A stretch of 64,000 nt of DNA from Octopus sinensis (Eukaryota), in the NCBI RefSeq assembly GCF_006345805.1, contig NC_043021.1, positions 5,580,001 through 5,644,000 on the forward strand, in the 5' to 3' direction. The translations under genes were made by a program, and so were the position numbers. The notes beneath the pieces were generated by a model that worked only from the letters and a program-made list of their open reading frames with translations, was not told the DNA's origin and made no database searches. Shown here piece by piece: positions 22,413-51,469 of the stretch (position 1 is its first letter; each line of letters opens with the position of its first letter).

Positions 22413-22571
22413 TACAGGCATGGCTGTGTGGTAAGAAGCTTGCTTCCCAACCACATGGTTCCGGGTTCAGTCCCACTGCATGGCACCTTAGGCAGGTGTC
22501 TTCTACTATGGCCTTGGGCCTACCAAAGCCTTGTGAATGGATTTGGTAGATGGAAACTGAAAGAAGCCTGT

Positions 22572-22636
<65 letters not shown>

Positions 22637-38650: not shown

Positions 38651-39734
38651 TACATATATTTTGTTTGGAGTGAATTATTCTTAACTTGTTGGAAAAAAAA
38701 AATTATGATAAATGAAAATATAATTTTACAAGGTAGGGTTACAAGGTGTGACCCTCATCCTGTCTTAAGGTAAAAAGTTTGATTCCCAAACTTCTCACCA
38801 CACAGCTATTTTTCTCTGCAAAAATTGCTGAACTCTTTGGTTTTGTAGATTTGCAATCTGCATGGTTTTCTCAATAGTGCTAGTGGCATGCAAAAGCACC
38901 CGGTATGCACTGTGAAGTGATTGGCATTAGGAAGGGCATCCAGCCACAGAAACCATGTCAAAGCAAATACTCAAACACAATGCAGTCCTGGGACACATTG
39001 GGTCTTTGTCAAACCATCCAATCCATGCCAGCATGAAACATGGACAATAAATGGTGATGATGATATAGTGTTTTCACACTTGTCAATTCGTAGAAATTTC
39101 TCCAGGGATTACCTAAATGTGTTGGATATGATTTTATATGAATGTTTTACTCAACACTACTTTGTGTGGCTTTATGTATTCAATGGTTGCTTGACAAAGC
39201 TTTATGCACATCAGTATATGCACAATATGCTATTATAATATATATAAATGAATTTGTTCTTACTGGGCTGTGAATGACAGATTTGTTCTTCTTAGTTGAC
39301 AATGCAAAACAACATAGAAAGACATGCATCTTATTCACAGCCCAATGTGTTTTCATACATGTTGAGGAGAATTTTCTCCTGGAACTATTTGCACAATGGA
39401 AAGTTTTCTACATTTGGGTGTGCTTGAGCATGTAAATACAATGAGTGTGTATACACACACACACACGGTTTGTGGATTAACTATGCTATTGATAATTTTA
39501 TCCGAAATGGACTCAGTTACTGACATGCTAAAGTGGAATGGTTGAAGAATTGGGAATTTTTACCCACATGAAACCAGCACTATTGATCCACACATAAAGA
39601 ATATTTATCCACCAAATATAGTTTTAATCACTCATTCTCACTGTTTAATTCTATCTATCTATCTCTTTGTCTCTGTCTGCCTGTCTCTGTTTATCTGCTT
39701 ATCCAGGTATCTGTCTGTCTGCCTGATCCCTACA

Positions 39735-42700
39735 TACCTTGGTCATAGGGCCACAAAATTAAAAATCAAAGATGTGCCTCCTGAGATACAAATAAAATGG
39801 CTTGTGTCTGCCATTTATTATGATACTGAGGAGGCTATCCACACCTTATAAATCGCTGTCCTAGACCAGCAAAATTGGATTGCTCAAGGAGTAGAAATCC
39901 TTGCTCAAGTCGATCCAATCAGTATTGAAATTATTCCACATCTCATCAAACTGGCAGACGGTTCGAATTTACATGAGGCTGTCAAAGGCAGAAAGCCACA
40001 TTGCTATGTTTATGGTAGCAAACCACACTTAAAAATTAATTGCCCATTAGCACAGAAACAACAACCACAACAATAAGTAAACTAAAAACCAAGAATAAAA
40101 AACAGCATTGCTACCCACACCACCATATGCACAACTGATAAAACAGCTCTACCAACAAATGAAAGAATATCAGCAACCAACAAACAAGCTCAACTAATGG
40201 CATCCCCATCAGCACCACCAAGAACAGAAACAACACCATCACCACCACCACCATCAACAACTCCAAAGAAAGAAGAGAAAAACAAAAGGACTCATATTCC
40301 ACCCCCCAAAACCCATATACCACACACCAACCAACACCGATAACAAAATCAACATTAATGCACTCATAAATAGACCCCAACACCCTTCCCTTTCCACAAA
40401 GGGTTGGCAAGTGGCCAGAGGGGGAAAAGAATAGAGAAACAAACAAAGCAGGAAGGTTTACCACCCCTGAAACCAAAACACCCGAAGAAAACAAAAGTAT
40501 TAACACAAACACAAGAACACCAAATGGCCCCACAATGTTGACAGCTATAAACACTAACAATTCAAAGTGAATGGAATACATTAAGTCAAACACCAACATA
40601 ACAGAAAACGATATCAAAACAAATAATCACCCACACACAACACATTAAAATCATGCATATAACACACTGAAATCTCTCTACCCAGATGCAGTAGGAAGAT
40701 TCCAAAAATACCTGTCTAAAAAACTGTACAAAACTCTTCTGGGAGAAGACTGAGGTGGAGGACAAACAACTTTCAAACACCAAGTGACTCTCTCTTTTTC
40801 ATCTTCCTTTCATGTGAAAAACACAACTTTTGATAGGACCATGCTCAGAATAGGTTTTATAAATGTACGTGGCTTGGGGTTGCCTTGGAAACAAGGCTAC
40901 CTGTTAAATGACATCAAGTCACAGAATGTGCATATCATAGCCATCAGTGAGACCAGACTCCACAACCAGTGGGCCCTCCAGCACATGTTCGGTGCACATT
41001 TTGACATTTATTTTTCTCCTTGTCTGCTGAGAATGGGTGGAGGTGGTACCATGGTGCTTCTTCGGAAGGGTATGGACCTTAAAGTAAGAGCAATATTCCT
41101 CGACCCAGAGGATACGCTGGACGTCTTGGATGTCGATGGCAGTAATGGGTGTGCTTTTCGACTGGTAACAGTTTATGCACCGTCCTTAACAGGTCGGCTA
41201 TATTACTTTTGACGTCTAGAGGTTTTCCTGGGAACGGCTCAACCTTTACTTTTAGTGGGAGATTGGAACACTACCTTGGACACGCATCTAGACTACTTGG
41301 GTAGAGATAGTAATAGGAGGGGATGTAAATTCATCAAAGACCTGCTCAGACGTTTCCAACTGTCTGAAAGGTACTGACTGGACCATGTGCCAATGTGGAC
41401 ATGGTGCAACCGCATCGGATTGTCCAGATCATATTTAGATAGAGTATTCTGTAGGACAGTGTAGGTTGTCCACAATTCCATATAGTCAACCACACAGATC
41501 ACAAATTTGTGACTTGTATGCTTGACTTAGATAAGAGCCACAGCCAGGGTCCTAGTTACTGGAAGCTGAATGCGTTGTTCACAGCATGCCAGGCTTACAG
41601 GGACTGGATTAGCACATTAGTAAAATGAGCACTGACGGGTGCCATCGTCAACAAAAGATGGTGGTATGCCCTAAAGAAAGCAATTAAAGCAGAATTGGTT
41701 AAGTATAGTAAGGCTCTAGCATTAGACTGAAATAGAACAGAGGGAGACCTAGATAAGAAATTAGAAGAGGGACTTAGAGCTGGCATCATGTCCAACATAC
41801 TGGTGGCAAGGTTGGCCCTCGACCAACACTTCAACACCAGACACAAAGGATGCGTTGTCAGAGCTAAGATGCGTGCTCTGGGGAATGAAGAGGTTGGAGC
41901 CACCCCAGTGGTGGAGGCATAACGAGGCAACAAAGCCACCACTAGGTCTCTGACAGAAGAACAAGAGCGCAAATTACTTGAGCCCAAAAGGATGTGTGAG
42001 GCCTTTCAACAATACTTTGCCTGACTGTTTGCGACAACTAGTGGGTCAGAACACAGGGTGGACTTTAGTGCCAACCTGCTTGGCCTGCCACAACTCTTGG
42101 CAAGAGAGGCGGAGTGTTGTGGAAGACCCATCACAGCCACGGACGTATGGGATGCAATGGCAGGCTGCACAGGAGACAAGTTGCCAGGCTCGGATGGTCT
42201 GCCCTATGAACTCTATTGTCATATGCCAGACTTGTTTGGAGGTGTCTTGACAGCTGTCTACTGCAACTGGCAGCAAAACGGGAGTATTTCCATTTCTGTG
42301 AAGTGAGGAGCAGTGGCACTGCTAAAGAAAAATTCAAACAAGGGGAACGTCATAGATAACTTCAGGCCCATCACTCTGTTCAATGCAGATTTGAAGATTT
42401 TGGCCAAGGTGCTAGCTGAGAGGTTGGCACTTGTCATTGAGAAACTGGTTGACAAGGCACAAACATGCACTGTGCCGGGCAAGAGTATCCATGATAACCA
42501 GCATCTGATGGGCTACCTCATAGAGAAGATAGTTAAGGAACCTGGCATTGGTGATGCACTGATCAATTTGGATCAATCGAAAGCTTTTGATAGGGTCAAC
42601 CATCACTACTTGAAGGCTGTCCTTAGAGAGGCTGGTTTCAGTCCTGTTTTAAACAGAGGCATCCGCTTGGTAGTTCGCATAAATAGTCATCTGTCCAGAC

Positions 42701-43250
42701 CATTTAACATCACACGTTCTGTCCATCAAGGATGCCCCTTCTCGTCGCTTCTGTACGTATTGACTCTAGAGCCACTTCTGCAGAAGCTGGCAATGCTGAG
42801 GGACATCCCATGAGAAGTGGTATTTGGGAGGAGTGTGTCTGCATACGTGGATGATGTTACCGTAATATTGTCGAGCCGCAGGCATATTGACCTGATTGGC
42901 AAGACACTAAAAGAATATGGAGCAGTAACAAGAGCGAAAATTAACCAGGAAAACTCAGTGGGTTTGCAGCTCGGCACCTGGAGAAGGAAACCTATGCCAT
43001 TCAACAGTGTCTTCATCATGGGACACTGGACCAACAGATGGGTTAAATTGCTCGGGGTCTGGTTCAGTCCGGAGCTCCAAATGGATAAGAACTGGGACAA
43101 GATAATGAGTAGGGTGGCTACTCTCATCCAGCAATGGGCTGAGAGGAAGCTATCCCCAAAAGGTTTTCCTCTTTTTTCTCTTTCGAAAAGAAAAGCTCTA
43201 CGTTGTATTTTGTCTCCTCTGTGTTCAGCCATGTGTGGCTAATAAAGAAA
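39735..43250 (+). mobile_element. Decayed L1/Tx1-clade LINE: ORF1 remnant, ORF2 (APE + RT), internally deleted 3' part
   Basis: ORF1 with a degenerate knuckle KGRKPHCYVYGSKPHLKINCP. ORF2 from ATG 40841 (MLRIGFINVRGL..ISETRL, GDWN, SYLDRV), RT motifs PGSDGLPYELY, NFRPITL, DQSKAFDRV, QGCPFS, YVDD. Several stops and frameshifts; AATAAA at 43241. Confidence 0.9.
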
Positions 43251-43251
43251 G

Positions 43252-43619
43252 ATATCTATCCATCTATCTATCTAATTATCCCTCTATGTAATTATCTATC
43301 TAATTATCCATCTATTTAATCATCTATCTAATTATCCATCTATTTAATCATCTATCTAATTATCCATCTATTTAATTATCTATCCATCCATCCATTTATC
43401 TATCTATTTAATTATCTATCCATCCATCTATTTAATTATCTATCCATCTATCTATTTAATTATCTACCTACCTACCTACTTCTGTCTGTCTGCCTTTCTG
43501 TCTGTCTATCTATCTATCTATCTATCTATTTAATTATCTACCTACCTACCTACCTGCCTTCTGTCTGTCTGTCTATCTATCTATTTAATTATCTATCCAT
43601 CTATCTATTTAATTATCAC

Positions 43620-43653
<34 letters not shown>

Positions 43654-43693
43654 GTCTGTCTGTCTGTCTGTCTATTTGTCTGTCTATCTATCT
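43252..43693. repeat. (TCTA)/(TCCA)/(TCTG)n compound microsatellite
   Basis: Directly visible. Confidence 0.92.
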
Positions 43694-45055
43694 AGTTAGC
43701 CAACTGTTGTTCACTGAGTTCCATTAATGACACTTGTATATAACAATGTTTTTTTTTTGTTTCTTTTTTCAAATGCTCAGAGTCATTAGTAAGCATTCCC
43801 CAGTGGACCAAGCACAAATTGAAGGTAGCTGTCTTGGTGCCTAAATGTCGAATGCTCACAGCCCTCTTTAACAGTTGGATATCACAGTTTGGTAGAGTGT
43901 CAATCATTAGCCCTTACGTTTTATAGATGTTTAGTGGAGGGTAATATGAACAACAGTGGCCTTTGGGGATAGCCTGGGTCCCTATGAAGGATAATCTGTA
44001 CAGCTTTTTTCGAAGAACTTTCAGATTCGGAACTATAAATATTAGGTCGCGCGTGCGCAACTCAAGGGAAATAACCATTGCAATAATCCTGAAACGATTA
44101 CGTCCCTTTATAAAAATTCATTTATCCTTTTCGTACCATTTGGTCCAGTATTGGAATCTTGCGCAACGTCTCGTTCATGTTCAAGAAATGGGTCTACTAT
44201 GTCTCTATCTTATTTTATCTGCAGTGGAATAATCGCTAGGATTCAGCATGAAACCATTAGGAATTACAACTGTGTTTCGTGGTCTGCTACCACAACATCT
44301 CCTTTATAGGATCCAGTTAGCTCAAGACATCATCAGGAGGGACCACGTCCGGTTTCGGCCCCCTACGCCTCTACCGTTTTGACGTGCCCCCCCCCTTTCG
44401 GAGGTGTCTTCAGCTCTGGTGTTGGGTGCATGTCTTCTTTCTTCTGTTCCCTGGCCTCTTCGGTGTATCGTCAGCGAGTGTCAGCCGGTGACTGACTGTC
44501 TTGTCAAATTTTTCCCTTAAAAAAAAAACAAAAAAAACCACCTATTATTCTATATCTAAAACCATGGTAGCCTGTATATACTGGCCCACAGCCCAGTCTC
44601 GAACCTGCTGCAGTGTAACTTATCAGTGACTAGATTGTAATCGACTGACCCCTCCCGCGAATTCACTGGACATGCCGGGCAAAATGCTTAATGGCATTTT
44701 GTCCAGCGTACGTTCTGAGTTCAAATTCTGCCGAGGTCAACTTTGCCTTTCCTCCTTTCGGGGACGATGTAATCGATTTATTCCCCCCTCCACCACCCCA
44801 AATTGCTACCTTTGTGGTAAAATTTATAACTATTACTATTGTTGTTGTTATTTAAAGGCGGCGAGCTGGCAGGATTGTTAGCACGCCGGGCGAAATGCTT
44901 AGCAGCATTTCGTCTGTCTTTATGCTCTGAGTTCAAAATCTGCTGAGGTCGACTTTGCCTTTCATCCTTTTGGAATCGATAAATTAAGTACCTGTAAAAT
45001 ATTGAGGTCGAAGTTATTGACTAGTCCCCTCCCCCAAAATCTCAGGCCTTGTGCC

Positions 45056-45103
<48 letters not shown>

Positions 45104-45664
45104 TATTGAGTGAGAGAGCAATGCATGCCATCAAAGTGAAGCCCAGTATACCCATCATAATTACTTGTCTGATAAGGGTACACCAGGCACATGCATCACA
45201 ACCATATGTGCGCAACATGGTGGTCTTATATCAAGATAAACAGCACATGACCTTGCAGGTGGGGGCCCAGTTAGAATTTTTTTCAGGTTGAGTAGCCCAT
45301 CCCGCTCAAAAGGTCCCTGAATAAGGTTTGTTTAAGGATGTTGAACGAAACACCCATGTTTCCAGAAGTGAATTATTCAAACCCCAAAGAATCCCTCTCA
45401 ACATATGGCTTTAATGCTCTCCCACTACTTCTGCACATGAGCAGAGATGCACATATCGTCAGCCACTAAGGGACATGCTCAGCTGGTTAAGGTCAAACAA
45501 CCGACAAGCAAATCTGTGGTATTGAGCAGAATATTTGCTGTAGCCCATCTTTTATACCAAGACAAAACAATGTACATGAACCAAGGGAGGAAAGACAAAG
45601 AAGGGCAGAGTTGAGCAATTAAAAGGTGATTATACTGGCAGTGACCGAGCATGGCCGCAGCCCC

Positions 45665-45784
45665 AGGTCTACCAAATCCACTCACAAAGCTTTCGTCGGC
45701 CCGAGGCTATAGTAGAAGACACTTGACCAAGGTGCCACGCAGTGGGACTGAATACAGAACCATGTGGTTGGGAAGCAGGCTTCT
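45665..45784 (-). mobile_element. SINE B head remnant interrupted at AGAAGCCTGCTTCC
   Basis: Reverse complement of the head from agaagcctgcttcccaaccac to ggatttggtagac; the head's first ~25 nt are absent. Confidence 0.8.
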
Positions 45785-46242
45785 TTATTTCATTACATTT
45801 GCCATAAAGGCAGTACATACAGTAAAGTAGCATTGCAGGCTGGACAAGGACATTAATGAAATGAATGATAATGAAAGAAAGATGATAAGGATGGGAGAAG
45901 ACAAAAAGCGCCTGCCGACTCCTGCTTCTCTAAAACATTGTTCTTTAAAACCAAACACAAAACGAGGTATTAAACCTCTTACAACTTTTGGACTTAACAA
46001 ACAACATAGTTCAATAATTACATGTATATAAATACAATACACAAAGCCCCTCCTCCCAGACCTGGCTTACGCTTCCCTCAGGCAATGCACCAGCTCTAGG
46101 TCGGGGCCCCAGAAGGCGTATCTAAACATGTCCTTTGAGAAGGTGTTCATTACCCTGACCATAGCGACATCCGATATGATCTTCGTAGTCCCCTGCGAAG
46201 GCCACTCCTCGTCCTCTGTCCAGGGCATGGGCTCCTCCCTCT
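45785..46242 (-). mobile_element. ORF1-only L1/Tx1-like element, unit 1 (5'-truncated)
   Basis: C-terminal ORF1 piece EDEEWPSQGTTKIISD...FRY, then 3' UTR and AATAAA; 3' UTR homologous to unit 3. Confidence 0.65.
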
Positions 46243-46257
46243 GGGAAGCAAGCTTCT

Positions 46258-48094
46258 TTATTTTATCAAATTAGCCATGGAGGCCTTACACTTACATAAA
46301 AATCAAAACGTCAATCAAACATCAAAAATACATTATCACTTTTCCCTACCTCCTCTTTCCGGGGACCCCAGTCAAATATCTAGCCGCCTGCAGAGCAGAC
46401 CACGTTGACAGCCGGGAGTTCAGAAAGAAGGCGAAGTGCCTATTATCAAATGTTTGTGTCACACAGTGCCACGATTTATAACTCACCCTCAACATAACTT
46501 GTGCCCGCATCCTCCTCCATCCTCCACGCCTCTTTCAAGATCGAATCGAGTTCCGTGTCAGCGTTGCCCGGGAACAAGCGATATTCCTCATCGAGCCCCT
46601 TCAAGCCTAAACGTCTCGTCAAATGTTATGGTCTCCACAGCTATCTGTGGAGGCCATTCGGGATCCTGTGTGAAGGCTAAAGGTGCTCCCTTATGGTGCT
46701 TTTCCACCACCTTTTCAACCTCTCCGCCTCTATAGAAGAAGATCAATAATTCGTCTTCCTCCGGGGGCGGGATATCCAATTCTTCCGTTGGCGGCACAGT
46801 ACCCGCCAACGGTGTTTCTTCTCCTGCCGGTGGCACAACCCCAACCGACGTAGTTCCAGGATATTCCAGTATTAAGGCACCGACTGCCGGCAATGTTCCG
46901 TTTCTCTTCCTCTTTTTTTTTCTTTTCAACTGAGGAAGGGTGCGTCTCCTCCGTGACCAAGAGATTCGTCTTCCCCTCCTCATCTCTAGGATCCTTCGGT
47001 GAGCAACAATGGGTGCTCACCTTCTTCCTCTTTCGGCCCCTGTTTGAGGAGTCCTCCGCCTCCTCGGCCGCCTTCATTCCCTCTTCTACAGAGGTCTCAC
47101 TCAACTGCTCCGGGACCTTATTTTGTTCCTGGGGACAGTTTTTCTTTATATAGCCTGACTCCAGGCACCGATGACACCTGGTGGTGGGGGGGACCTTCAA
47201 ATAGCAACCACACCGTTGCGTATTTGACACCCCTGGAAATGAATTTAATTTTTGGCAAATACTCTGCCAACTCCTTTTCAATTGCCATCTTTTCGAATAG
47301 GGCGATGGTGTAGCATGACTTGGAGTAGGTTCTCAACACCATCGTCCCAACTTCACGGTCTTTCAACTTTTTGGGCAGTATAATCTCCCTCTCCAAAACT
47401 TTGTTTTTTTTTTCATTGCCCCCCCCCCCCTTTTTTTTTGAAAATATGTTCAAAATAAAACTTAAAAAGAGAGAAGAAAAATGAAATCAAAAGAAAGTCA
47501 CAATAAACAAAAAGGAGAAAGTCAAATAAAGTTTAGAAGAAAGAAAGTCAATAGTTCAGAAACACAGCAAAAAAAAAAAATCTTCCAGCCATTCGGTACT
47601 CCCGGCTTAGGTTGAACCCGGAACGCCACAACTGGAACACAACTTCCACAAAAATTGATATACAAATTGTTCAAGCTTCGGAGGCAAAAACACTGCCCCA
47701 AACAGCAGTTCTCACAATTATTTTAAAATTCTTCAAAAGGCACAATACTCCTTCAAGCAACAATTAAGTGAGAAAATATTCCTCCAAGCAATAATTAAGT
47801 GAGAAAAATATTCACTCAACATAAACCGAAGACGAATACGCCCCTAAACAAAAATTCTCACAATTCAGCGAGAAAAAAATATTCTCTCGATGCAAGCAGA
47901 ACCAGAATTCTGAATCCAGTAGGACTTTGTACAAAAACCAATTCTCAACAAAAATTCCCACTGGACCCCCACCAAAAAAAAAAATAGAATCTTACCTTGC
48001 AAAGGAGCTTCAAAATTTTTCAATTCGAGACGGCTTCCAAAGCATGTCTCACCGCTTTGGTGCCAAACACCACAATAATTCGCACATGCGCAGT
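46258..48094 (-). mobile_element. ORF1-only L1/Tx1-like element, unit 2 (5' UTR, ORF1 with apparent internal deletion, 3' UTR)
   Basis: MVLRTYSK...KFISRGVKYATV, knuckle RCHRCLESGYIKKNCP, basic KRKK runs, DPEWPPQ; ~200-bp 3' UTR and AATAAA; no APE/RT. Confidence 0.7.
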
Positions 48095-48108
48095 GGAAGC
48101 AAGCTTCT

Positions 48109-49520
48109 TTATTTTATTAGATTTACCACAAGGGCAGCACACAGAGAGAAGCTTGCGGGCTGGACACAGACATTAATGGGATGAATGACAATGATACAAG
48201 GATGATAAGGATGGGAGAAGAAGAAAAGCGCCCGCCGACTTTCGCTTCTCTAAAACATTGTTCTTTTTTTCTTTTTTAAACACACAATGAGGCGAAAAAC
48301 CTCTCACATAGTTCAGACGTGGAGGCGCAATGGCCCAGTGGTTAGGGCAGCGGACTCGCGGTCGTAGGATCGCGGTTTCGATTCCCAGACCGGGCGTTGT
48401 GAGTGTTTATTGAGCGAAAACACCTAAAAAGCTCCACGAGGCTCCGACAGGGATGATGGTGATCCCTGCTGTACTCTTTCGCCACAACTTTCTCTCACTC
48501 TTACTTCCTGTTTCTCTTGTACCTGTATTTCAAAGGGCCGGCCTTGTCACTCTCTGTGTCACGCTGAATATCCCCCGAGAACTACGTTAAGGGTACACGT
48601 GTCTGTGGAGTGCTCAGCCACTTACACGTTAATTTCACGAGCAGGCTGTTCCGTTGATTCGGATCAACCGGAACCCTCGTCGTCGTAACCGACGGAGTGC
48701 TTCCATCCTCATAGTTCAGAATTAAAAACACATACACGAGGCAATAATCCTCTAACTTTTTACATTTTACAGAGTCTTTTTGAGGTAATACACCTCTTAC
48801 ACAATTGTCCCATATTTCAATTTTTCTGTCCGGCCAGGCTCCTCGCTTCATTGAAGCATCTAGTCGGTTCCAAGCCGGACCACTTGGCCATATATCTAAA
48901 GGAGTCCGCTGGGAAGGAAGTCATTATCCTGCACAGACCGTTATCCCATATGACCTCCGCATTCACTTGCGAAGGCCACTCTGGGTCCTCCATGCAGGAC
49001 AGAAGCCCCTCCTACCGACCCTTCCTTAACAATTTTCCTAATCGAATTTTGTAAGGTCCCTCCCTTATGGAAGAGGACTACAAATTCCTCCCCCAGCGGC
49101 TCATCCGCCGAAGAAGCATCGGGACATTGCCGGCAGCGTGTCACAATGTCCCTTTTCCTTTTCCTTTTCTTTTTCCCTTGGACCGTGGGAGAGTGGTGTT
49201 CCTTTGCTGTGTCCAGCAGGTTCTCCCTTCATCCCGCAGCCCCCGGGTCCTTCGGTGAGCAACAATGGTTGCCCACCTTTCGCTTTCGTTTTTTCGAGGA
49301 GGTTTCCACCTCCTCGACATCCTCCTCCTTCTCTCCCGCCAATGAGGGAGCAGGGAGTGATGCCTCTATTAACTGCCCCAGGACCCTATTTTAGGGGCAG
49401 TTTCTCTTGATGTGGCCGGTTTCTAGGCACAGGTGAGACTTGGGGGGGAGGCGTCCCTCGAGCATCACCGGATACCTAGACCCGGCCATCCTCAAAAATT
49501 CCGGGAAAACCAGACTTTCG
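48109..49520 (-). mobile_element. ORF1-only L1/Tx1-like element, unit 3 (5' end lost)
   Basis: VMLEGRLPPKSHLCLETGHIKRNCP, HCCSPKDP (shared with unit 2), EDPEWPSQ; 3' UTR and AATAAA; no APE/RT. Confidence 0.7.
48318..48709 (+). mobile_element. tRNA-derived SINE family F with 11-bp TSD
   Basis: A-box tggcccagtgg, B-box gtttcgattccc; TSD catagttcaga at 48307-48317 and 48710-48720; diverged relative near 23005-23235. Confidence 0.85.
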
Positions 49521-49689
49521 GTTGATTGGGTCCATAGGGTCAAACCAGCTTTTATGGAATGATGTCAAAGTAACACACATGTAGTCCCAACCGAGCGAGG
49601 CCGTGTTATGTTTGTGTAAGAAAAAAATACATAAAAACACCTCTAGTTTTCATATATATTGCAACAGCTAACAGTGAAATATAGAATTT

Positions 49690-51170
49690 AAAAATAGCTT
49701 TTTCGACCATCAGATTGGTGCGGCTAATATGGCAGGTAAACATCGTGGTTGTCAAGCAGAAATAAAGAAGACTCGGCCTCTGGTCCAATACGTGCACTGC
49801 TGTGCTCATGTTCCTCAACTTATAGCTAAGTCCATTCAACAAGCTTCATTTATCAAAAATGTTCTCGATTACGTGAATGAATTGGGGAAACTATATAGTA
49901 CATCAGAGAAATTTAAGCACGCATATTTATTACAATACTAGCAGTATCGCCCGGCGTTGCTCGGGTTTGTAAGGGAAGTAACTATAAAAGCATTTTTAGA
50001 GAATTACTTCCCTTATATAAACCGAGCAAAAAATGCATTAAAAATGCGGAAAAATGATGATAATTTTTTTAAAATCGTAGACTCATCGTAGACGCGCGCT
50101 AGTACCCAGAAGGGCTCGATATGAATGACGACTATAATATACCCGCTTTTGGTTAAACTGCACCGCAAAATGTGGGAGTAGTTAGGAATTTAAATCGGAG
50201 TAGACAGACTCTCACACAAGTTCAGTTTTATATATAAAGATAATGAAGAAAATGAAGTATCGTTACCACGCTCCTTAAAACCTGTGTGCCCTACTCGATA
50301 GCTAACACGACTTCCTGCAGTCAAAGCCGTTCTTGAAATTATCCAGATGTCCTCATTTCTTTACAAGAGTCATCAAATGTGTTTGGCACCAACATTGTAT
50401 CCAGAGCTAATGGCATTCTTACGTGTCTCTCTACGGGCCAATATGTTCTTGCATTGCACGTTGTAGTTCCGTTACTTCAACTCCTTTGAGGATTGAACAA
50501 ATCTTTTCAAAGTATCACCGTCAGTCTAGGTGGAATGTTGCGTAGTGTCAAACTAGTGCAGGATGAGCTAAAAAAAAATCTACGCAGGGAAGAAAAATTT
50601 CAGGAGCTGTTCAATACAGTAGAAAAAATGAATTATCAACTCAATATTTCTTCTTTGGAGCTATCCAGACAACGAAAAATTGCTAAAAGATACCAGGAAG
50701 GAAATGCGTTAAAATATCAACACTGCACTGTTTTGGATCATTGCAGGGTGCAGTATTTGCAAGTAGTGGATACTGCAATAGCAAATTTGAAAGATTTTTT
50801 TTTTCACATGATTTAGCAGATTGGGAAAAACTGAGCAATATTTTACTCAATGGAAATTTTTGTGCTGAAATGATCAGTATTCAAAGCTTGATGAATTTTC
50901 CTTAAGGAACGAAATACTTTTTTTTATAGAAATCATCATAGTGGATCATCTCTCGAGGATCATCGTAAAATATTTGGTGAACAGCAGCCAGAAGTTCATC
51001 GCATGTTTCCAAATGTTGAGCGATTGCTCAGGCTATTTTTAGTGTTTCCAACCAGTTCTTGTGAAGCTGAAAGATCTTTTAGCGCTCTGGGGAGACTCAA
51101 AACTTGGCTGCGCTCGACCGTGACTCAGCAAAGGTTGAATTATATTCTAATATGCCATGTTTAGAAAAAA
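49690..51170 (+). mobile_element. hAT-superfamily transposase remnant (pseudogenised)
   Basis: GAANMAGKHRGCQ...YVHCCAH, LKPVCPTR*, and dimerisation domain FPNVERLLRLFLVFPTSSCEAERSFSALGRLKTWLRST; stops and an insertion. Confidence 0.85.
49937..50241 (+). mobile_element. Helentron/Helitron-like non-autonomous element (short form) inserted in the hAT remnant
   Basis: actagcagtatcgcccggcgttgctcggg 5' end with hairpin, ttttatatataaagat 3' end, no TSD; relatives at 61406 and 63380. Confidence 0.65.
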
Positions 51171-51469
51171 ATTAGTTGTGAAAAAGTTGCTAAATTATTT
51201 ACTGACGGCAAGATATATAAAACATTTGGAAAATACTAAAAGACAATAATTTTACTTAATATTTTTTATTTAAGAGCCTTTGTTTTATATTTTGTTTATT
51301 TGATATAATAAATTCTTTTAAAGCTTTTTTTTATAACTGAACTTCATTTGAATATATAAAATTTAATTAGCATAAAATTTTAGTAATGTGATAGGGTCCG
51401 GGAAAGGCACCATAAGCAATACCAACATGCTCCTTTTAAGATGCAGCAAATGTTGGTTCGCCCCCCTCA

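What the first reader, a model, noticed from the sequence alone, without database searches (positions are those of the whole stretch)
45665..49520. Three retroelements stacked at one repeated 14-bp site inside a SINE head: candidate SINE-targeting retrotransposon system
Seen: on the minus strand each of three units ends AATAAA immediately followed by GAAGC(T/C)TGCTTCC (plus-strand GGAAGCA(A/G)GCTTCT at 45771-45784, 46244-46257, 48095-48108). After the first junction the sequence continues as a SINE B head (caaccacatggtt...cagtcccactgcgtggc). The same 14-mer is the native head sequence of the SINE B variant at 22434-22447. Established: Tx1-group LINEs include sequence-specific families (Keno at U2 snRNA, Mutsu at 5S rDNA, Dewa at tRNA arrays), and TPRT creates target-site duplications. 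Inference: each insertion regenerated the target on its 5' side, so later copies stacked in order unit 1, 2, 3. This would be a retroelement family using a SINE's tRNA-like head as its landing site, a safe-harbour or hyperparasite strategy. Caveat: the expected 5' SINE remnant right of unit 3 is not visible, as the hAT remnant begins there.
Basis: partly seen in the sequence, partly recalled or inferred. Interest (0 to 1): 0.8.

Follow-up and report, generated by a model that had tools for sequence, protein, structure and literature searches.

The report
SINE-head-targeting ORF1-only retroelement stack
Three decayed copies of a small LINE-derived retroelement lie head to tail at one exact spot in an octopus SINE, and relatives at two other loci abut the same spot, so this looks like a new SINE-targeting family of the known site-specific retrotransposons.

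Summary
On the minus strand three units (45785-46243, 46258-48094, 48109-~49557) each end in AATAAA followed by (A)GAAGCYTGCTTCC. After unit 1 the sequence continues as the rest of the abundant octopus SINE.

The units are not full retrotransposons. They are decayed copies of a ~2.15-kb non-autonomous element with three parts: a 5'UTR, a LINE type-I ORF1 (two RRM-like domains, a CCHC knuckle and a basic tail), and a 3'UTR. The 3'UTR ends in a small hairpin plus AAUAAA. There is no ORF2 and no poly(A).

Two independent Octopus sinensis loci carry full-length relatives. In both, the 5' end abuts the missing SINE 5' head at exactly the same nucleotide (...GTGGTAAGAAGYTTGCTTCC|element).

Five junctions therefore fit one model: target-primed insertion at a fixed site in the SINE head, with a 13-15-bp target duplication that re-creates the site.

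Autonomous relatives share the ORF1 type and the 3' hairpin-AAUAAA end. They encode an L1/Tx1-like ORF2 and sit in microsatellites.

Limits:
- Only three loci were examined.
- No locus has both SINE halves.
- The autonomous partner was not found.
- Tx1 membership and the insertion order are untested.

Verdict: a new SINE target for a known kind of element. Interest is moderate.

The parts
45668..45784 (-). 3' part of the target SINE (SINE positions ~17-134), beginning with duplicated-site copy 1. Its own 3' tail is missing.
   Evidence: blastn to the intact SINE at 22417-22575: 88% over 118 nt. In register with other copies.
45771..45784 (-). Site copy 1: AGAAGCCTGCTTCC, contiguous with the SINE remainder (CAACCACATGG...)
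45785..46243 (-). Unit 1: 459-bp copy, 5'-truncated inside the ORF tail (last 53 codons plus 3'UTR). Same subfamily as unit 3.
   Evidence: 83% identity to the unit 3 3'UTR and 72% in the ORF tail. ORF 46067-46228.
45800..45812 (-). 3'-terminal hairpin UGCC-UUUAU-GGCA of unit 1, about 15 nt upstream of AAUAAA
   Evidence: Conserved with pairing kept in all three units. The same motif ends autonomous relatives in L080, L083 and L084 and the ORF1-only element in L081.
46244..46257 (-). Site copy 2: AGAAGCTTGCTTCC, between the unit 2 3' end and the truncated unit 1 5' end
46258..48094 (-). Unit 2: 1837-bp copy with complete 5' and 3' ends. It has a ~317-bp internal deletion (second RRM-like domain) and frameshifts. 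Diverged subfamily.
   Evidence: Positions 1-896 and 895-1683 align to L002 15741-16662 and 16979-17740 at 81-86%. ORF pieces listed.
46477..47416 (-). Unit 2 ORF remnant in three frames: N-terminal RRM-like domain, degenerate CCHC knuckle (CHRCLESGYIKKNC), basic stretch and C-terminal tail
   Evidence: 66% identity to P0001 over aa 8-78.
46273..46285 (-). 3'-terminal hairpin GGCC-UCCAU-GGCU of unit 2
48095..48108 (-). Site copy 3: AGAAGCTTGCTTCC, between the unit 3 3' end and the full-length unit 2 5' end (ACTGCGCATGTGCG...)
48109..49557 (-). Unit 3: a copy that stops inside the ORF (about aa 150 of P0001) next to a 5'-truncated hAT remnant. No SINE 5' head is present there.
   Evidence: tblastn with P0001 aa 152-276 hits 49552-49175 at 62%. 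blastn to the L001 element reaches 49553. CCHC knuckle CLETGHIKRNC.
48124..48136 (-). 3'-terminal hairpin UGCC-CUUGU-GGUA of unit 3
48318..48709 (+). Later insertion inside the unit 3 3'UTR: a different SINE-like repeat flanked by an 11-bp duplication CATAGTTCAGA (48307-48317 and 48710-48720). Not part of the system.
   Evidence: Read directly. Unit 1 has a near-match to this sequence (CATAGTTCAAT) once. Copies of the repeat occur in L002 and L082.
22417..22575 (+). Intact, unoccupied SINE of the variant that carries the exact site (22434-22447). This is the 'empty' form of the target.

Best explanation
The block is a head-to-tail stack of three old, decayed copies of a ~2.15-kb non-autonomous LINE derivative.

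A full-length copy has three parts:
- a ~700-nt 5'UTR;
- one ORF of about 400 aa, a type-I LINE ORF1 with two RRM-like domains, one CCHC knuckle and a basic/acidic tail;
- a ~300-nt 3'UTR ending in a 4-bp hairpin, an A-rich stretch and AAUAAA(GAA).

It has no ORF2 and no poly(A).

The element inserts by target-primed reverse transcription at one fixed position in the head of the abundant octopus SINE, between ...GTGGTAA and GAAGCTTGCTTCC. The two nicks are staggered by 13-15 bp, so (AA)GAAGCTTGCTTCC is duplicated on both sides of the insert. Each insertion therefore leaves two usable copies of the site, and later copies land there. This produces SINE5'-site-[unit]-site-[unit]-site-[unit]-site-SINE3'.

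The endonuclease and reverse transcriptase must come in trans from a related autonomous L1/Tx1-type LINE. That LINE probably recognises the shared 3' hairpin-AAUAAA end. The short GAA/AAGAA overlap between the RNA end and the target probably helps priming.

Shown here:
- the junction anatomy at five junctions in three independent loci;
- 5' truncation of unit 1;
- ORF1 homology and fold;
- absence of ORF2 in every copy where the region survives;
- the 3' motif shared with autonomous LINEs that sit in microsatellites.

Inferred, not shown:
- the TPRT mechanism;
- that endonuclease specificity, rather than RNA-target annealing, picks the site;
- trans-mobilisation;
- the order of the three insertions, which cannot be determined.
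For: Junctions in the window: unit 3 AATAAAGAAGCTTGCTTCC|ACTGCGCATG (full-length unit 2 5' end). Unit 2 ...GCTTCC|CAGAGGGAGG (unit 1, truncated in the ORF). Unit 1 ...GAAGCCTGCTTCC-CAACCACATGG (SINE continues for 118 nt).

Independent loci:
- L001 (O. sinensis CM016886.1): SINE head ATAGGCTGAGGCATGGCTGTGTGGTAAGTAGCTTGCTTCC|TGTGCATGCG.
- L002 (CM016865.1): TAGGCGCAGGCGTTGCCGTGTGGTAAGAAGTTTGCTTCC|ACTGCGCATGTGCG.
- Their upstream flanks are unrelated and they belong to the unit-3-like and unit-2-like subfamilies respectively.

Chance estimate: there are about 17 SINE heads in 217 kb. By my estimate a random end falls on that exact nucleotide and strand with a probability of about 4e-5 per junction.

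ORF identity:
- phmmer against 1.8 billion representatives gave 47 hits at 22-36% identity (plus P0015 at 64% over 45 aa). The ten looked up were Octopus CCHC/ORF1-like gene models plus unnamed Logan, ENA and JGI contigs.
- Such ORF1s lie directly upstream of APE/RT ORF2s in the window LINE, in L003 and in L080.
- The AlphaFold model has pLDDT 78 with two RRM-like domains. The top Foldseek hits are tandem-RRM proteins.

No ORF2: none is present in unit 2, unit 3, L001 or L002.

Shared 3' end: GSC-CUUGU-GSC followed by AAUAAA occurs in units 1-3, in the full-length LINE of L080 (which has (ATT)n on both flanks), and in L081, L083 and L084. The L080 ORF2 relatives carry RVT_1 plus zf-RVT. The window LINE RT matches human L1 ORF2p best (1e-16, against R2 at 1e-8).

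Literature: Tx1-clade families target DNA transposons, LTR elements, microsatellites and small-RNA genes, and copies stacked next to earlier copies at the target are reported (PMC4494074). Type-I ORF1 in animals is described as consistent with Tx1 (PMC5203782). L1-Tx1 families have been recently active in O. vulgaris (PMC13282606).
Against: Only three loci were available. None shows both SINE halves around an element:
- The window lacks the 5' head. Unit 3 ends against a hAT remnant.
- L001 and L002 have both lost the element's 3' end and the SINE 3' part.

Other weaknesses:
- The exact ...GCTTCC variant is rare among unoccupied SINE heads (2 of 15). Part of the repeated 14-mer could be templated by the element RNA rather than duplicated from the target.
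- No autonomous partner with this target was found.
- All copies are decayed (frameshifts, deletions, 14-35% divergence), so nothing shows present activity.
- Tx1 membership is untested.
Confidence: 0.75

Rival explanations
1. The SINE-like pieces belong to the element itself. Under this reading it is a composite retroposon whose 5' end is a captured SINE head (nt 1-31) and whose 3' end repeats the 14-mer, a terminal redundancy. It would insert without target specificity, and the SINE continuation after unit 1 would come from a chance insertion or from recombination with a SINE.
For: Both full-length copies outside the window carry the SINE head at their 5' end and no SINE 3' part. The ...GCTTCC form of the 14-mer is rare in free SINEs. 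Captured small-RNA heads on LINE-derived bodies are known (SINEU; PMC4494074).
Against: Full-length unit 2 is preceded only by the 14-mer, not by SINE nt 1-18. Unit 1's 14-mer runs without a break into 104 more nucleotides of SINE in perfect register, which would need targeting anyway. An intact SINE with the exact site and no element exists at 22417-22575.
Confidence: 0.1
2. A single chimeric retrocopy rather than three insertions. During one TPRT event the reverse transcriptase would jump from a SINE RNA to the 3' end of one element RNA and then to further element RNAs. The jumps would be guided by 14-nt microhomology, because each element RNA ends in read-through target sequence.
For: End-to-end template jumping by LINE reverse transcriptases and chimeric retrocopies are established (from my own knowledge). 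AAUAAA lies 13-14 nt before the end of the 14-mer, so cleaved transcripts could end there (inference). L084 shows a near-identical head-to-tail array of an autonomous relative.
Against: It does not explain two independent 5' junctions with SINE nt 1-31 at the same nucleotide. It needs three jumps at the same sequence, including one from inside a truncated unit 1. Even so, it would still imply that the family normally resides at this SINE site.
Confidence: 0.08
3. Assembly artefact or local rearrangement. Repeats sharing a short palindromic 14-mer would have been mis-joined, or unequal crossing-over would have built the array.
For: The region is repeat-dense. The 14-mer contains a short inverted repeat (GAAGC-TT-GCTTC). 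No independent assembly of this locus could be retrieved.
Against: The three units differ strongly: unit 2 against unit 3 is ~68% in the only alignable stretch, and units 1 and 3 are 72-83%. One is truncated, one has an internal deletion and one carries a nested SINE, so this is not a collapsed or duplicated repeat. A 14-bp overlap is far too short to mislead a long-read assembler. The same junction type recurs in a different assembly.
Confidence: 0.03

Closest known systems
Tx1-clade target-specific LINEs that land in other transposons (Tx1L in the piggyBac-type Tx1D of Xenopus; Tx1-Mar families and their dependent SINEU-3 in Mariner-N4_AMi of crocodilians)
   Same: Insertion at one fixed sequence inside another mobile element. 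Non-autonomous dependents share the target. New copies are found next to earlier copies at the same target. ORF1 is type I (RRM plus CCHC) and the partners are APE-type. Sources: PMC4494074 and PMC5203782.
   Different: The target here is the head of a SINE. The two papers read on Tx1 targets and ORF1 types do not mention a SINE target. The copies seen encode ORF1 only. Clade membership could not be tested because the units have no RT.
Keno (U2 snRNA), Mutsu (5S rDNA), Dewa (tRNA arrays), and Kibi/Koshi ((TC)n and (TTC)n microsatellites)
   Same: Sequence-specific Tx1-group families that use multicopy small-RNA genes or microsatellites as safe sites. The autonomous octopus relatives found here sit in (ATT)n (L080) and (TCTA)n-like repeats (window).
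   Different: Those targets are host genes or simple repeats, not a retroposon. Here the site is a short sequence with an internal inverted repeat, found in a SINE-head subfamily.
HAL1 ('half-L1') elements of mammals
   Same: A non-autonomous LINE derivative that keeps the 5'UTR, ORF1 and 3' end, lacks ORF2, and depends on the parent LINE's ORF2 protein. This is from my own knowledge. Non-autonomous L1 derivatives made by internal deletion (Bao and Jurka 2010) are cited in PMC4494074.
   Different: HAL1 is a poly(A)-tailed L1 derivative with a type-II ORF1 and no target specificity. The octopus element has a type-I ORF1, no poly(A) and a fixed target.
R1/R2 rDNA elements
   Same: Precise insertion at one site of a multicopy target, no poly(A), 5'-truncated copies, and probable use of target-derived sequence at the RNA 3' end for priming (from my own knowledge).
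   Different: They belong to different clades (R2 has a restriction-like endonuclease), are autonomous, and use rDNA as target.

Membership tests
Sequence-specific non-LTR retrotransposon (TPRT-inserted) | Independent copies occupy the same nucleotide position of the same target sequence | tested here: met
   Five junctions in three loci are in register with the SINE head. The flanks of L001 and L002 are unrelated.
Sequence-specific non-LTR retrotransposon (TPRT-inserted) | Defined target-site duplication flanking an insert | tested here: inconclusive
   (AA)GAAGCYTGCTTCC flanks units 1 and 2 on both sides. No locus has both SINE halves around a single insert, and part of the repeat could be templated by the RNA.
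Sequence-specific non-LTR retrotransposon (TPRT-inserted) | Conserved 3' ends with variable 5' truncation | tested here: met
   All three 3' ends are complete and alignable. Unit 1 is truncated inside the ORF and unit 2 is full length at its 5' end.
Autonomous LINE | Encodes an endonuclease and a reverse transcriptase (ORF2) | tested here: not met
   Nothing APE- or RT-like lies between the ORF1 tail and the 3' end in unit 2, unit 3, L001 or L002. The family as seen is non-autonomous.
Tx1 clade (L1 superfamily) | RT domain groups with Tx1 in a clade phylogeny (RTclass1-type test) | not testable with these tools
   The units have no RT and no reference clade set was available. The RT of the related window LINE hits human L1 ORF2p best in the PDB (1e-16, against R2 at 1e-8). 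The L080 ORF2 relatives carry RVT_1 plus zf-RVT. Source names gave no clade.
Tx1 clade (L1 superfamily) | Type-I ORF1 (RRM domain(s) plus CCHC knuckle) | tested here: met
   Homologues have zf-CCHC. CX2CX4HX4C is present in unit 3, L001 and P0001. The model shows two RRM-like domains with tandem-RRM proteins as top Foldseek hits. This ORF1 type is not exclusive to Tx1.
HAL1-like ORF1-only LINE derivative | 5'UTR, ORF1 and 3' end retained, ORF2 absent, and 3' end shared with an autonomous LINE | tested here: met
   The architecture is the same in every copy where the region survives. The 3' hairpin-AAUAAA motif is shared with the autonomous LINEs of L080, L083 and L084. The specific parent LINE was not identified.
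tRNA-derived SINE (the target) | Head recognisable as tRNA-derived | tested here: not met
   ARAGORN found none. Rfam gave no tRNA match even at E<=10 on the intact copy. A-box-like TGGCTGTGTGG and B-box-like GGTTCAGTCCC are visible by eye only.
tRNA-derived SINE (the target) | Short, highly repeated, dispersed, with a simple-repeat tail | tested here: met
   Fifteen or more copies of ~155 bp at 82-92% identity in 64 kb, ending in (TA)n.
LTR retrotransposon / retroviral gag | Long terminal repeats, primer-binding site, pol | tested here: not met
   The only repeat at the unit ends is the 14-mer. There is no pol and no Pfam gag hit.
Processed pseudogene / retrogene | Poly(A) tail, random insertion sites, and a single copy per site | tested here: not met
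   AATAAA is followed directly by the site with no A-run. The flank is the same at every junction.

The most novel reading that the evidence does not exclude
Octopus genomes may hold a whole guild of ORF1-only, sequence-specific LINE derivatives. Each would supply its own RNA-binding ORF1 protein and borrow ORF2 protein from Tx1-like LINEs, and each would have its own landing site. The candidates seen here are the SINE head, a TGCTGGGTTCG site in L081, and microsatellites for the autonomous relatives. Under this reading the SINE-head family treats the SINE population (~11% of the genome) as a safe harbour, re-creates its own target at every insertion, and so builds arrays. This would be a three-level parasite chain: LINE, then SINE, then an ORF1-only element that lands in the SINE.
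Probability: 0.3. Interest if true: 0.65.

Novelty: new member of a known kind. Interest (0 to 1): 0.5.

Why it matters
Site-specific LINEs are used to study how an endonuclease and an RNA 3' end together choose a genomic address, and they are being explored for targeted gene delivery. A family whose address is a 13-15-bp site inside a SINE would add a new target class, a retroposon, to the list of small-RNA genes, microsatellites, DNA transposons and LTR elements.

It would also be an example of a site-specific ORF1-only (HAL1-like) dependent element. And it would help explain how nested repeat arrays build up in the very repeat-rich octopus genome. None of this changes what is known about the mechanism in principle.

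Tried and rejected
- Rfam at gathering threshold on the whole window and ARAGORN found nothing. Rfam at E<=10 on the intact SINE gave no tRNA match.
- Pfam on the unit ORF pieces gave no hit.
- Word-indexed protein searches with the stitched unit 2 ORF and with P0001 returned only P0001 itself. The exhaustive phmmer run was needed to find P0015 and the ORF1 superfamily.
- A metagenome scan for AATAAAGAAGCYTGCTTCC gave 70 hits in soil and gut contigs. None is homologous to the units, so they are chance matches.
- An exact-protein look-up of a window ORF, meant to find an independent assembly of the stack, found nothing on record.
- I tested whether the ORF tail is a relic of an ORF2 C-terminus. 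It shows no similarity to the window LINE or to other loci.
- A search for hAT terminal inverted repeats, meant to decide whether the hAT interrupted unit 3, returned only (TA)n noise. The unit 3/hAT boundary stays unexplained.
- The last protein search, with the L080 ORF2 C-terminus, was meant to obtain a clade name. It gave only 'hypothetical protein' names, although the RVT_1 plus zf-RVT domains were informative.
- The loci L080-L084 contain no further copy of this family.
- LTR element, retrogene and simple tandem duplication were considered and rejected (see the membership test and the rival explanations).


Full report
**What is in the sequence**

The window is octopus DNA. It is packed with a ~155-bp SINE: at least 15 copies at 82-92% identity. 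The best protein matches are Octopus sinensis and O. vulgaris gene models.

GGAAGCA(A/G)GCTTCT lies at 45771, 46244 and 48095 on the + strand, each followed by TTTATT. With one mismatch allowed there are six matches in the window, against 0.01 expected.

On the minus strand the region reads as follows:
- unit 3 (49557->48109), AATAA-AGAAGCTTGCTTCC
- unit 2 (48094->46258), AATAA-AGAAGCTTGCTTCC
- unit 1 (46243->45785), AATAA-AGAAGCCTGCTTCC
- then CAACCACATGGTTC..., the SINE from its position ~17 to 134 (88% identity)

An intact SINE of a minority variant at 22417-22575 carries the same 14-mer at 22434-22447. The majority subfamily has GTAGCTTGCTTACC there. The site lies ~18 nt inside the SINE. 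Neither ARAGORN nor Rfam recognises the head as a tRNA, so its tRNA origin rests on box-like motifs seen by eye.

**What the units are**

All three units are on the minus strand, and all three are damaged.
- Units 1 and 3 are one subfamily (83% identity in the 3'UTR, 72% in the ORF tail). Unit 2 is a diverged subfamily.
- Unit 1 (459 bp) begins inside the ORF, which is the 5' truncation typical of LINE-type insertion.
- Unit 2 (1837 bp) has both ends complete. Compared with a relative in O. sinensis it lacks ~317 bp inside the ORF.
- Unit 3 carries a later insertion of another SINE-like repeat (48318-48709, 11-bp duplication CATAGTTCAGA). It stops at ~49557, inside the ORF, against a 5'-truncated hAT transposase remnant.

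The ORF is frameshifted in the window. It encodes an N-terminal domain, a CX2CX4HX4C knuckle, a K/R-rich stretch and a ~130-aa tail. Pfam finds nothing.

The only close database relative is O. sinensis LOC115225585 (P0001, 281 aa). An exhaustive phmmer run gave 47 hits at 22-36% identity, plus P0015 at 64% over 45 aa. The ten I looked up were five Octopus gene models plus unnamed Logan, ENA and JGI contigs.

These proteins are LINE ORF1s:
- In the window, the same ORF1 type (39615-40178) precedes an APE-endonuclease/RT ORF2 (40784-43242).
- In the Logan contig L003 the ORF1 is followed by the start of an APE ORF2.
- In L080 a 615-aa ORF1 is followed by APE, RT and a zf-RVT-type C-terminus.

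An AlphaFold model of P0001 (pLDDT 78) shows two RRM-like domains. Its top Foldseek hits are tandem-RRM proteins such as SFPQ/NONO, hnRNP A1 UP1 and U2AF65. This is a type-I ORF1 as described in the literature (PMC5203782).

No copy of the family has an ORF2. The ORF1 tail runs straight into the ~300-nt 3'UTR in unit 2 and unit 3. L002 has the same layout, although its 3'UTR is cut ~155 bp short. L001 is cut within the ORF tail. The family is therefore an ORF1-only, non-autonomous LINE derivative of about 2.15 kb, comparable in architecture to mammalian HAL1.

**The decisive test: other loci**

I could not search octopus genomes by DNA. However, two gene models that overlap relatives gave me their loci.
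- L001 (CM016886.1) holds a unit-3-like copy. Its 5'UTR begins immediately after ATAGGCTGAGGCATGGCTGTGTGGTAAGTAGCTTGCTTCC.
- L002 (CM016865.1) holds a unit-2-like copy (81-86% identity). Its first base follows TAGGCGCAGGCGTTGCCGTGTGGTAAGAAGTTTGCTTCC.

Both upstream sequences are the SINE 5' head up to and including the 14-mer. The element's 5' end (ACTGCGCATGTGCG...) is the same as the one that follows the 14-mer in front of unit 2 in the window. The alignment puts all five junctions in register with the intact SINE.

The two loci are on different chromosomes. Their flanks share only microsatellite matches, and they belong to different subfamilies, so they are independent insertions.

There are about 17 SINE heads in 217 kb of octopus sequence. 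My own estimate is that a random end falls on that nucleotide in that orientation with a probability of about 4e-5 per junction. Three such coincidences are not credible.

**Mechanism**

The simplest model covering all junctions is target-primed reverse transcription at a fixed site.
1. The bottom strand is nicked at the left edge of (AA)GAAGCTTGCTTCC.
2. The top strand is nicked 13-15 bp downstream.
3. The site is therefore duplicated, giving SINE5'-site-element-site-SINE3'.
4. Either copy of the site can be hit again, which yields exactly the 14-mer-only internal junctions seen in the stack.

The boundary is ambiguous within AAGAA. Relatives end in AAUAAAGAAA (L083), AAUAAAGAGAAA (L081) and AAUAAAAAGAA (L080). 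The element RNA probably ends ...AAUAAAGAA and overlaps the target's GGTAAGAA by a few bases, as is usual for priming by microhomology.

AAUAAA lies 13-14 nt before the end of the site. Transcripts of an inserted copy could therefore be cleaved just after the target-derived sequence and carry it for annealing. This is inference.

The last ~45 nt are the only part conserved between the two subfamilies. They contain a 4-bp hairpin whose pairing is kept through one-sided changes: UGCC/GGCA, UGCC/GGUA and GGCC/GGCU. The same GSC-CUUGU-GSC hairpin followed by AAUAAA ends the autonomous LINEs in L080, L083 and L084 and the ORF1-only element in L081. That shared end is the likely handle by which a related LINE's ORF2 protein mobilises the ORF1-only copies in trans.

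The relatives also behave as target-specific elements:
- The full-length LINE in L080 has (ATT)n on both sides.
- The window LINE fragment has (TCTA/TCTG)n on both sides.
- The L081 element is flanked by TGCTGGGTTCG on both sides.

**Rivals**

(a) The SINE pieces could be part of the element, as a captured head and a terminal redundancy. This fits the fact that L001 and L002 show only the head. It fails on three counts: unit 2 is preceded by the 14-mer alone, unit 1's 14-mer runs on into 104 more SINE nucleotides, and an unoccupied SINE with the site exists.

(b) One chimeric retrocopy could have been made by template jumping. This cannot explain the two independent 5' junctions.

(c) Misassembly or duplication is unlikely, because the units differ strongly and each has its own lesions.

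What remains weak:
- There are only three loci, and no single locus has both SINE halves.
- L001 and L002 have both lost their 3' ends, so the 3'-flank test outside the window is missing.
- The ...GCTTCC variant is rare among free SINE heads. Selection of a rare subfamily and RNA-templated site sequence cannot be separated.
- No autonomous partner with this target was found.
- The order of the three insertions cannot be derived.

**Comparison with what is known**

Target-specific non-LTR elements are well known. The Tx1 clade in particular uses U2/U5 snRNA genes, 5S rDNA, tRNA arrays, microsatellites, satellites, DNA transposons (Tx1D, Mariner-N4_AMi) and LTR elements. It has non-autonomous dependents (SINEU-3) that share the target, and copies are found next to earlier copies at the target (PMC4494074). 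L1-Tx1 families have been recently active in O. vulgaris (PMC13282606).

The present family works like these. Membership of the Tx1 clade cannot be tested, because the units have no RT. The related LINE's RT is L1-like, the ORF2 has zf-RVT, and the ORF1 is type I. All of that is consistent but not diagnostic.

I did not find a SINE head as target, or a site-specific ORF1-only element, in the papers searched. I could not consult Repbase.

**Verdict**

This is a new member of a known kind: a sequence-specific LINE-type retroelement with a new target class and a HAL1-like architecture. The copies are old and decayed. Interest is moderate (0.5), and confidence in the site-specific model is 0.75.

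Noticed in passing
window 39600-43250 (+), flanks 39650-39720 and 43250-43700: An L1/Tx1-like LINE fragment with the same ORF1 superfamily (39615-40178) and an APE plus RT ORF2 (40784-43242). It has (TCTA/TCTG)n-like microsatellite on both sides and may be a microsatellite-targeting relative. The ORF2 stops shortly after the RT, so its 3' part is missing.
   Followed up: partly
window 48318-48709 (+), duplications at 48307-48317 and 48710-48720: A different ~390-bp SINE-like repeat (head GGCGCAATGGCCCAGTGGTTAGGGC...) is inserted in the unit 3 3'UTR, with an 11-bp target duplication CATAGTTCAGA. Copies also occur in L002 and L082.
   Followed up: partly
window 49729-51300 (+): A frameshifted hAT-type transposase remnant with a CCAH motif and a C-terminal dimerisation-like region. 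It lacks its N-terminal half and starts where unit 3 breaks off. No terminal inverted repeat was found, so which element interrupted which is unresolved.
   Followed up: partly
L080 9700-15360 (O. sinensis CM016872.1): A full-length autonomous relative: ORF1 of 615 aa, then APE, RT and a zf-RVT-like C-terminus. It ends ...AGCCCTTGTGGCCAATAAAAAGAATTA and has (ATT)n on both flanks, which is apparent microsatellite-specific insertion.
   Followed up: partly
L081 9904-11665 (O. vulgaris OX597833.1): A second kind of ORF1-only element (379-aa ORF, no ORF2) of about 1.75 kb. It ends GGAGGCCTTGTGCCTATAATAAAGAGAAA and is flanked on both sides by TGCTGGGTTCG, a candidate 11-bp target duplication in a B-box-like sequence. 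The related element in L082 sits next to duplicated MITE-like sequence.
   Followed up: partly
L084 445-13026 (O. vulgaris OX597840.1): A head-to-tail array of a 5.28-kb autonomous relative, with at least two and a half copies at 98.5-99.7% identity. Each junction reads ...GGCCCCTTGTGGGTAAATAAAATAAAAC followed within ~7 nt by the next 5' end. This could be recent stacking or tandem duplication.
   Followed up: partly
L003 ~1848, L081 ~11152, L082 ~11168, L084 ~7340: A consensus splice-donor-like GGTAAGT sits right after the ORF1 stop or directly before the ORF2 ATG in several relatives. ORF1-only forms might derive from spliced LINE RNAs. This is an untested idea.
   Followed up: no
L083 ~9100 onward (O. 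sinensis CM016876.1): A 5'-truncated LINE 3' end reading ...GGGCCCTTGTGGCTAATAAAGAAA, followed by a flank with repeated GTTCTACCACA...-type motifs. The flank may be a satellite target.
   Followed up: no
window 45103-45579: The left flank of the stack is a copy (90% over 497 bp) of a repeat also present in O. vulgaris (L082 2889-3384). The 88 bp between it and the SINE fragment (45580-45667) are unmatched. On the minus strand they include GCTGCGGCCATGCT, which resembles an inverted piece of the long octopus SINE tail.
   Followed up: partly
window 47689-47908 (unit 2 5'UTR): Short internal direct repeats, including 31-nt tandem units at 47744-47805 and further copies about 146 nt apart. They are also present in the L002 relative, so the 5'UTR has a repetitive structure of unknown role.
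   Followed up: no
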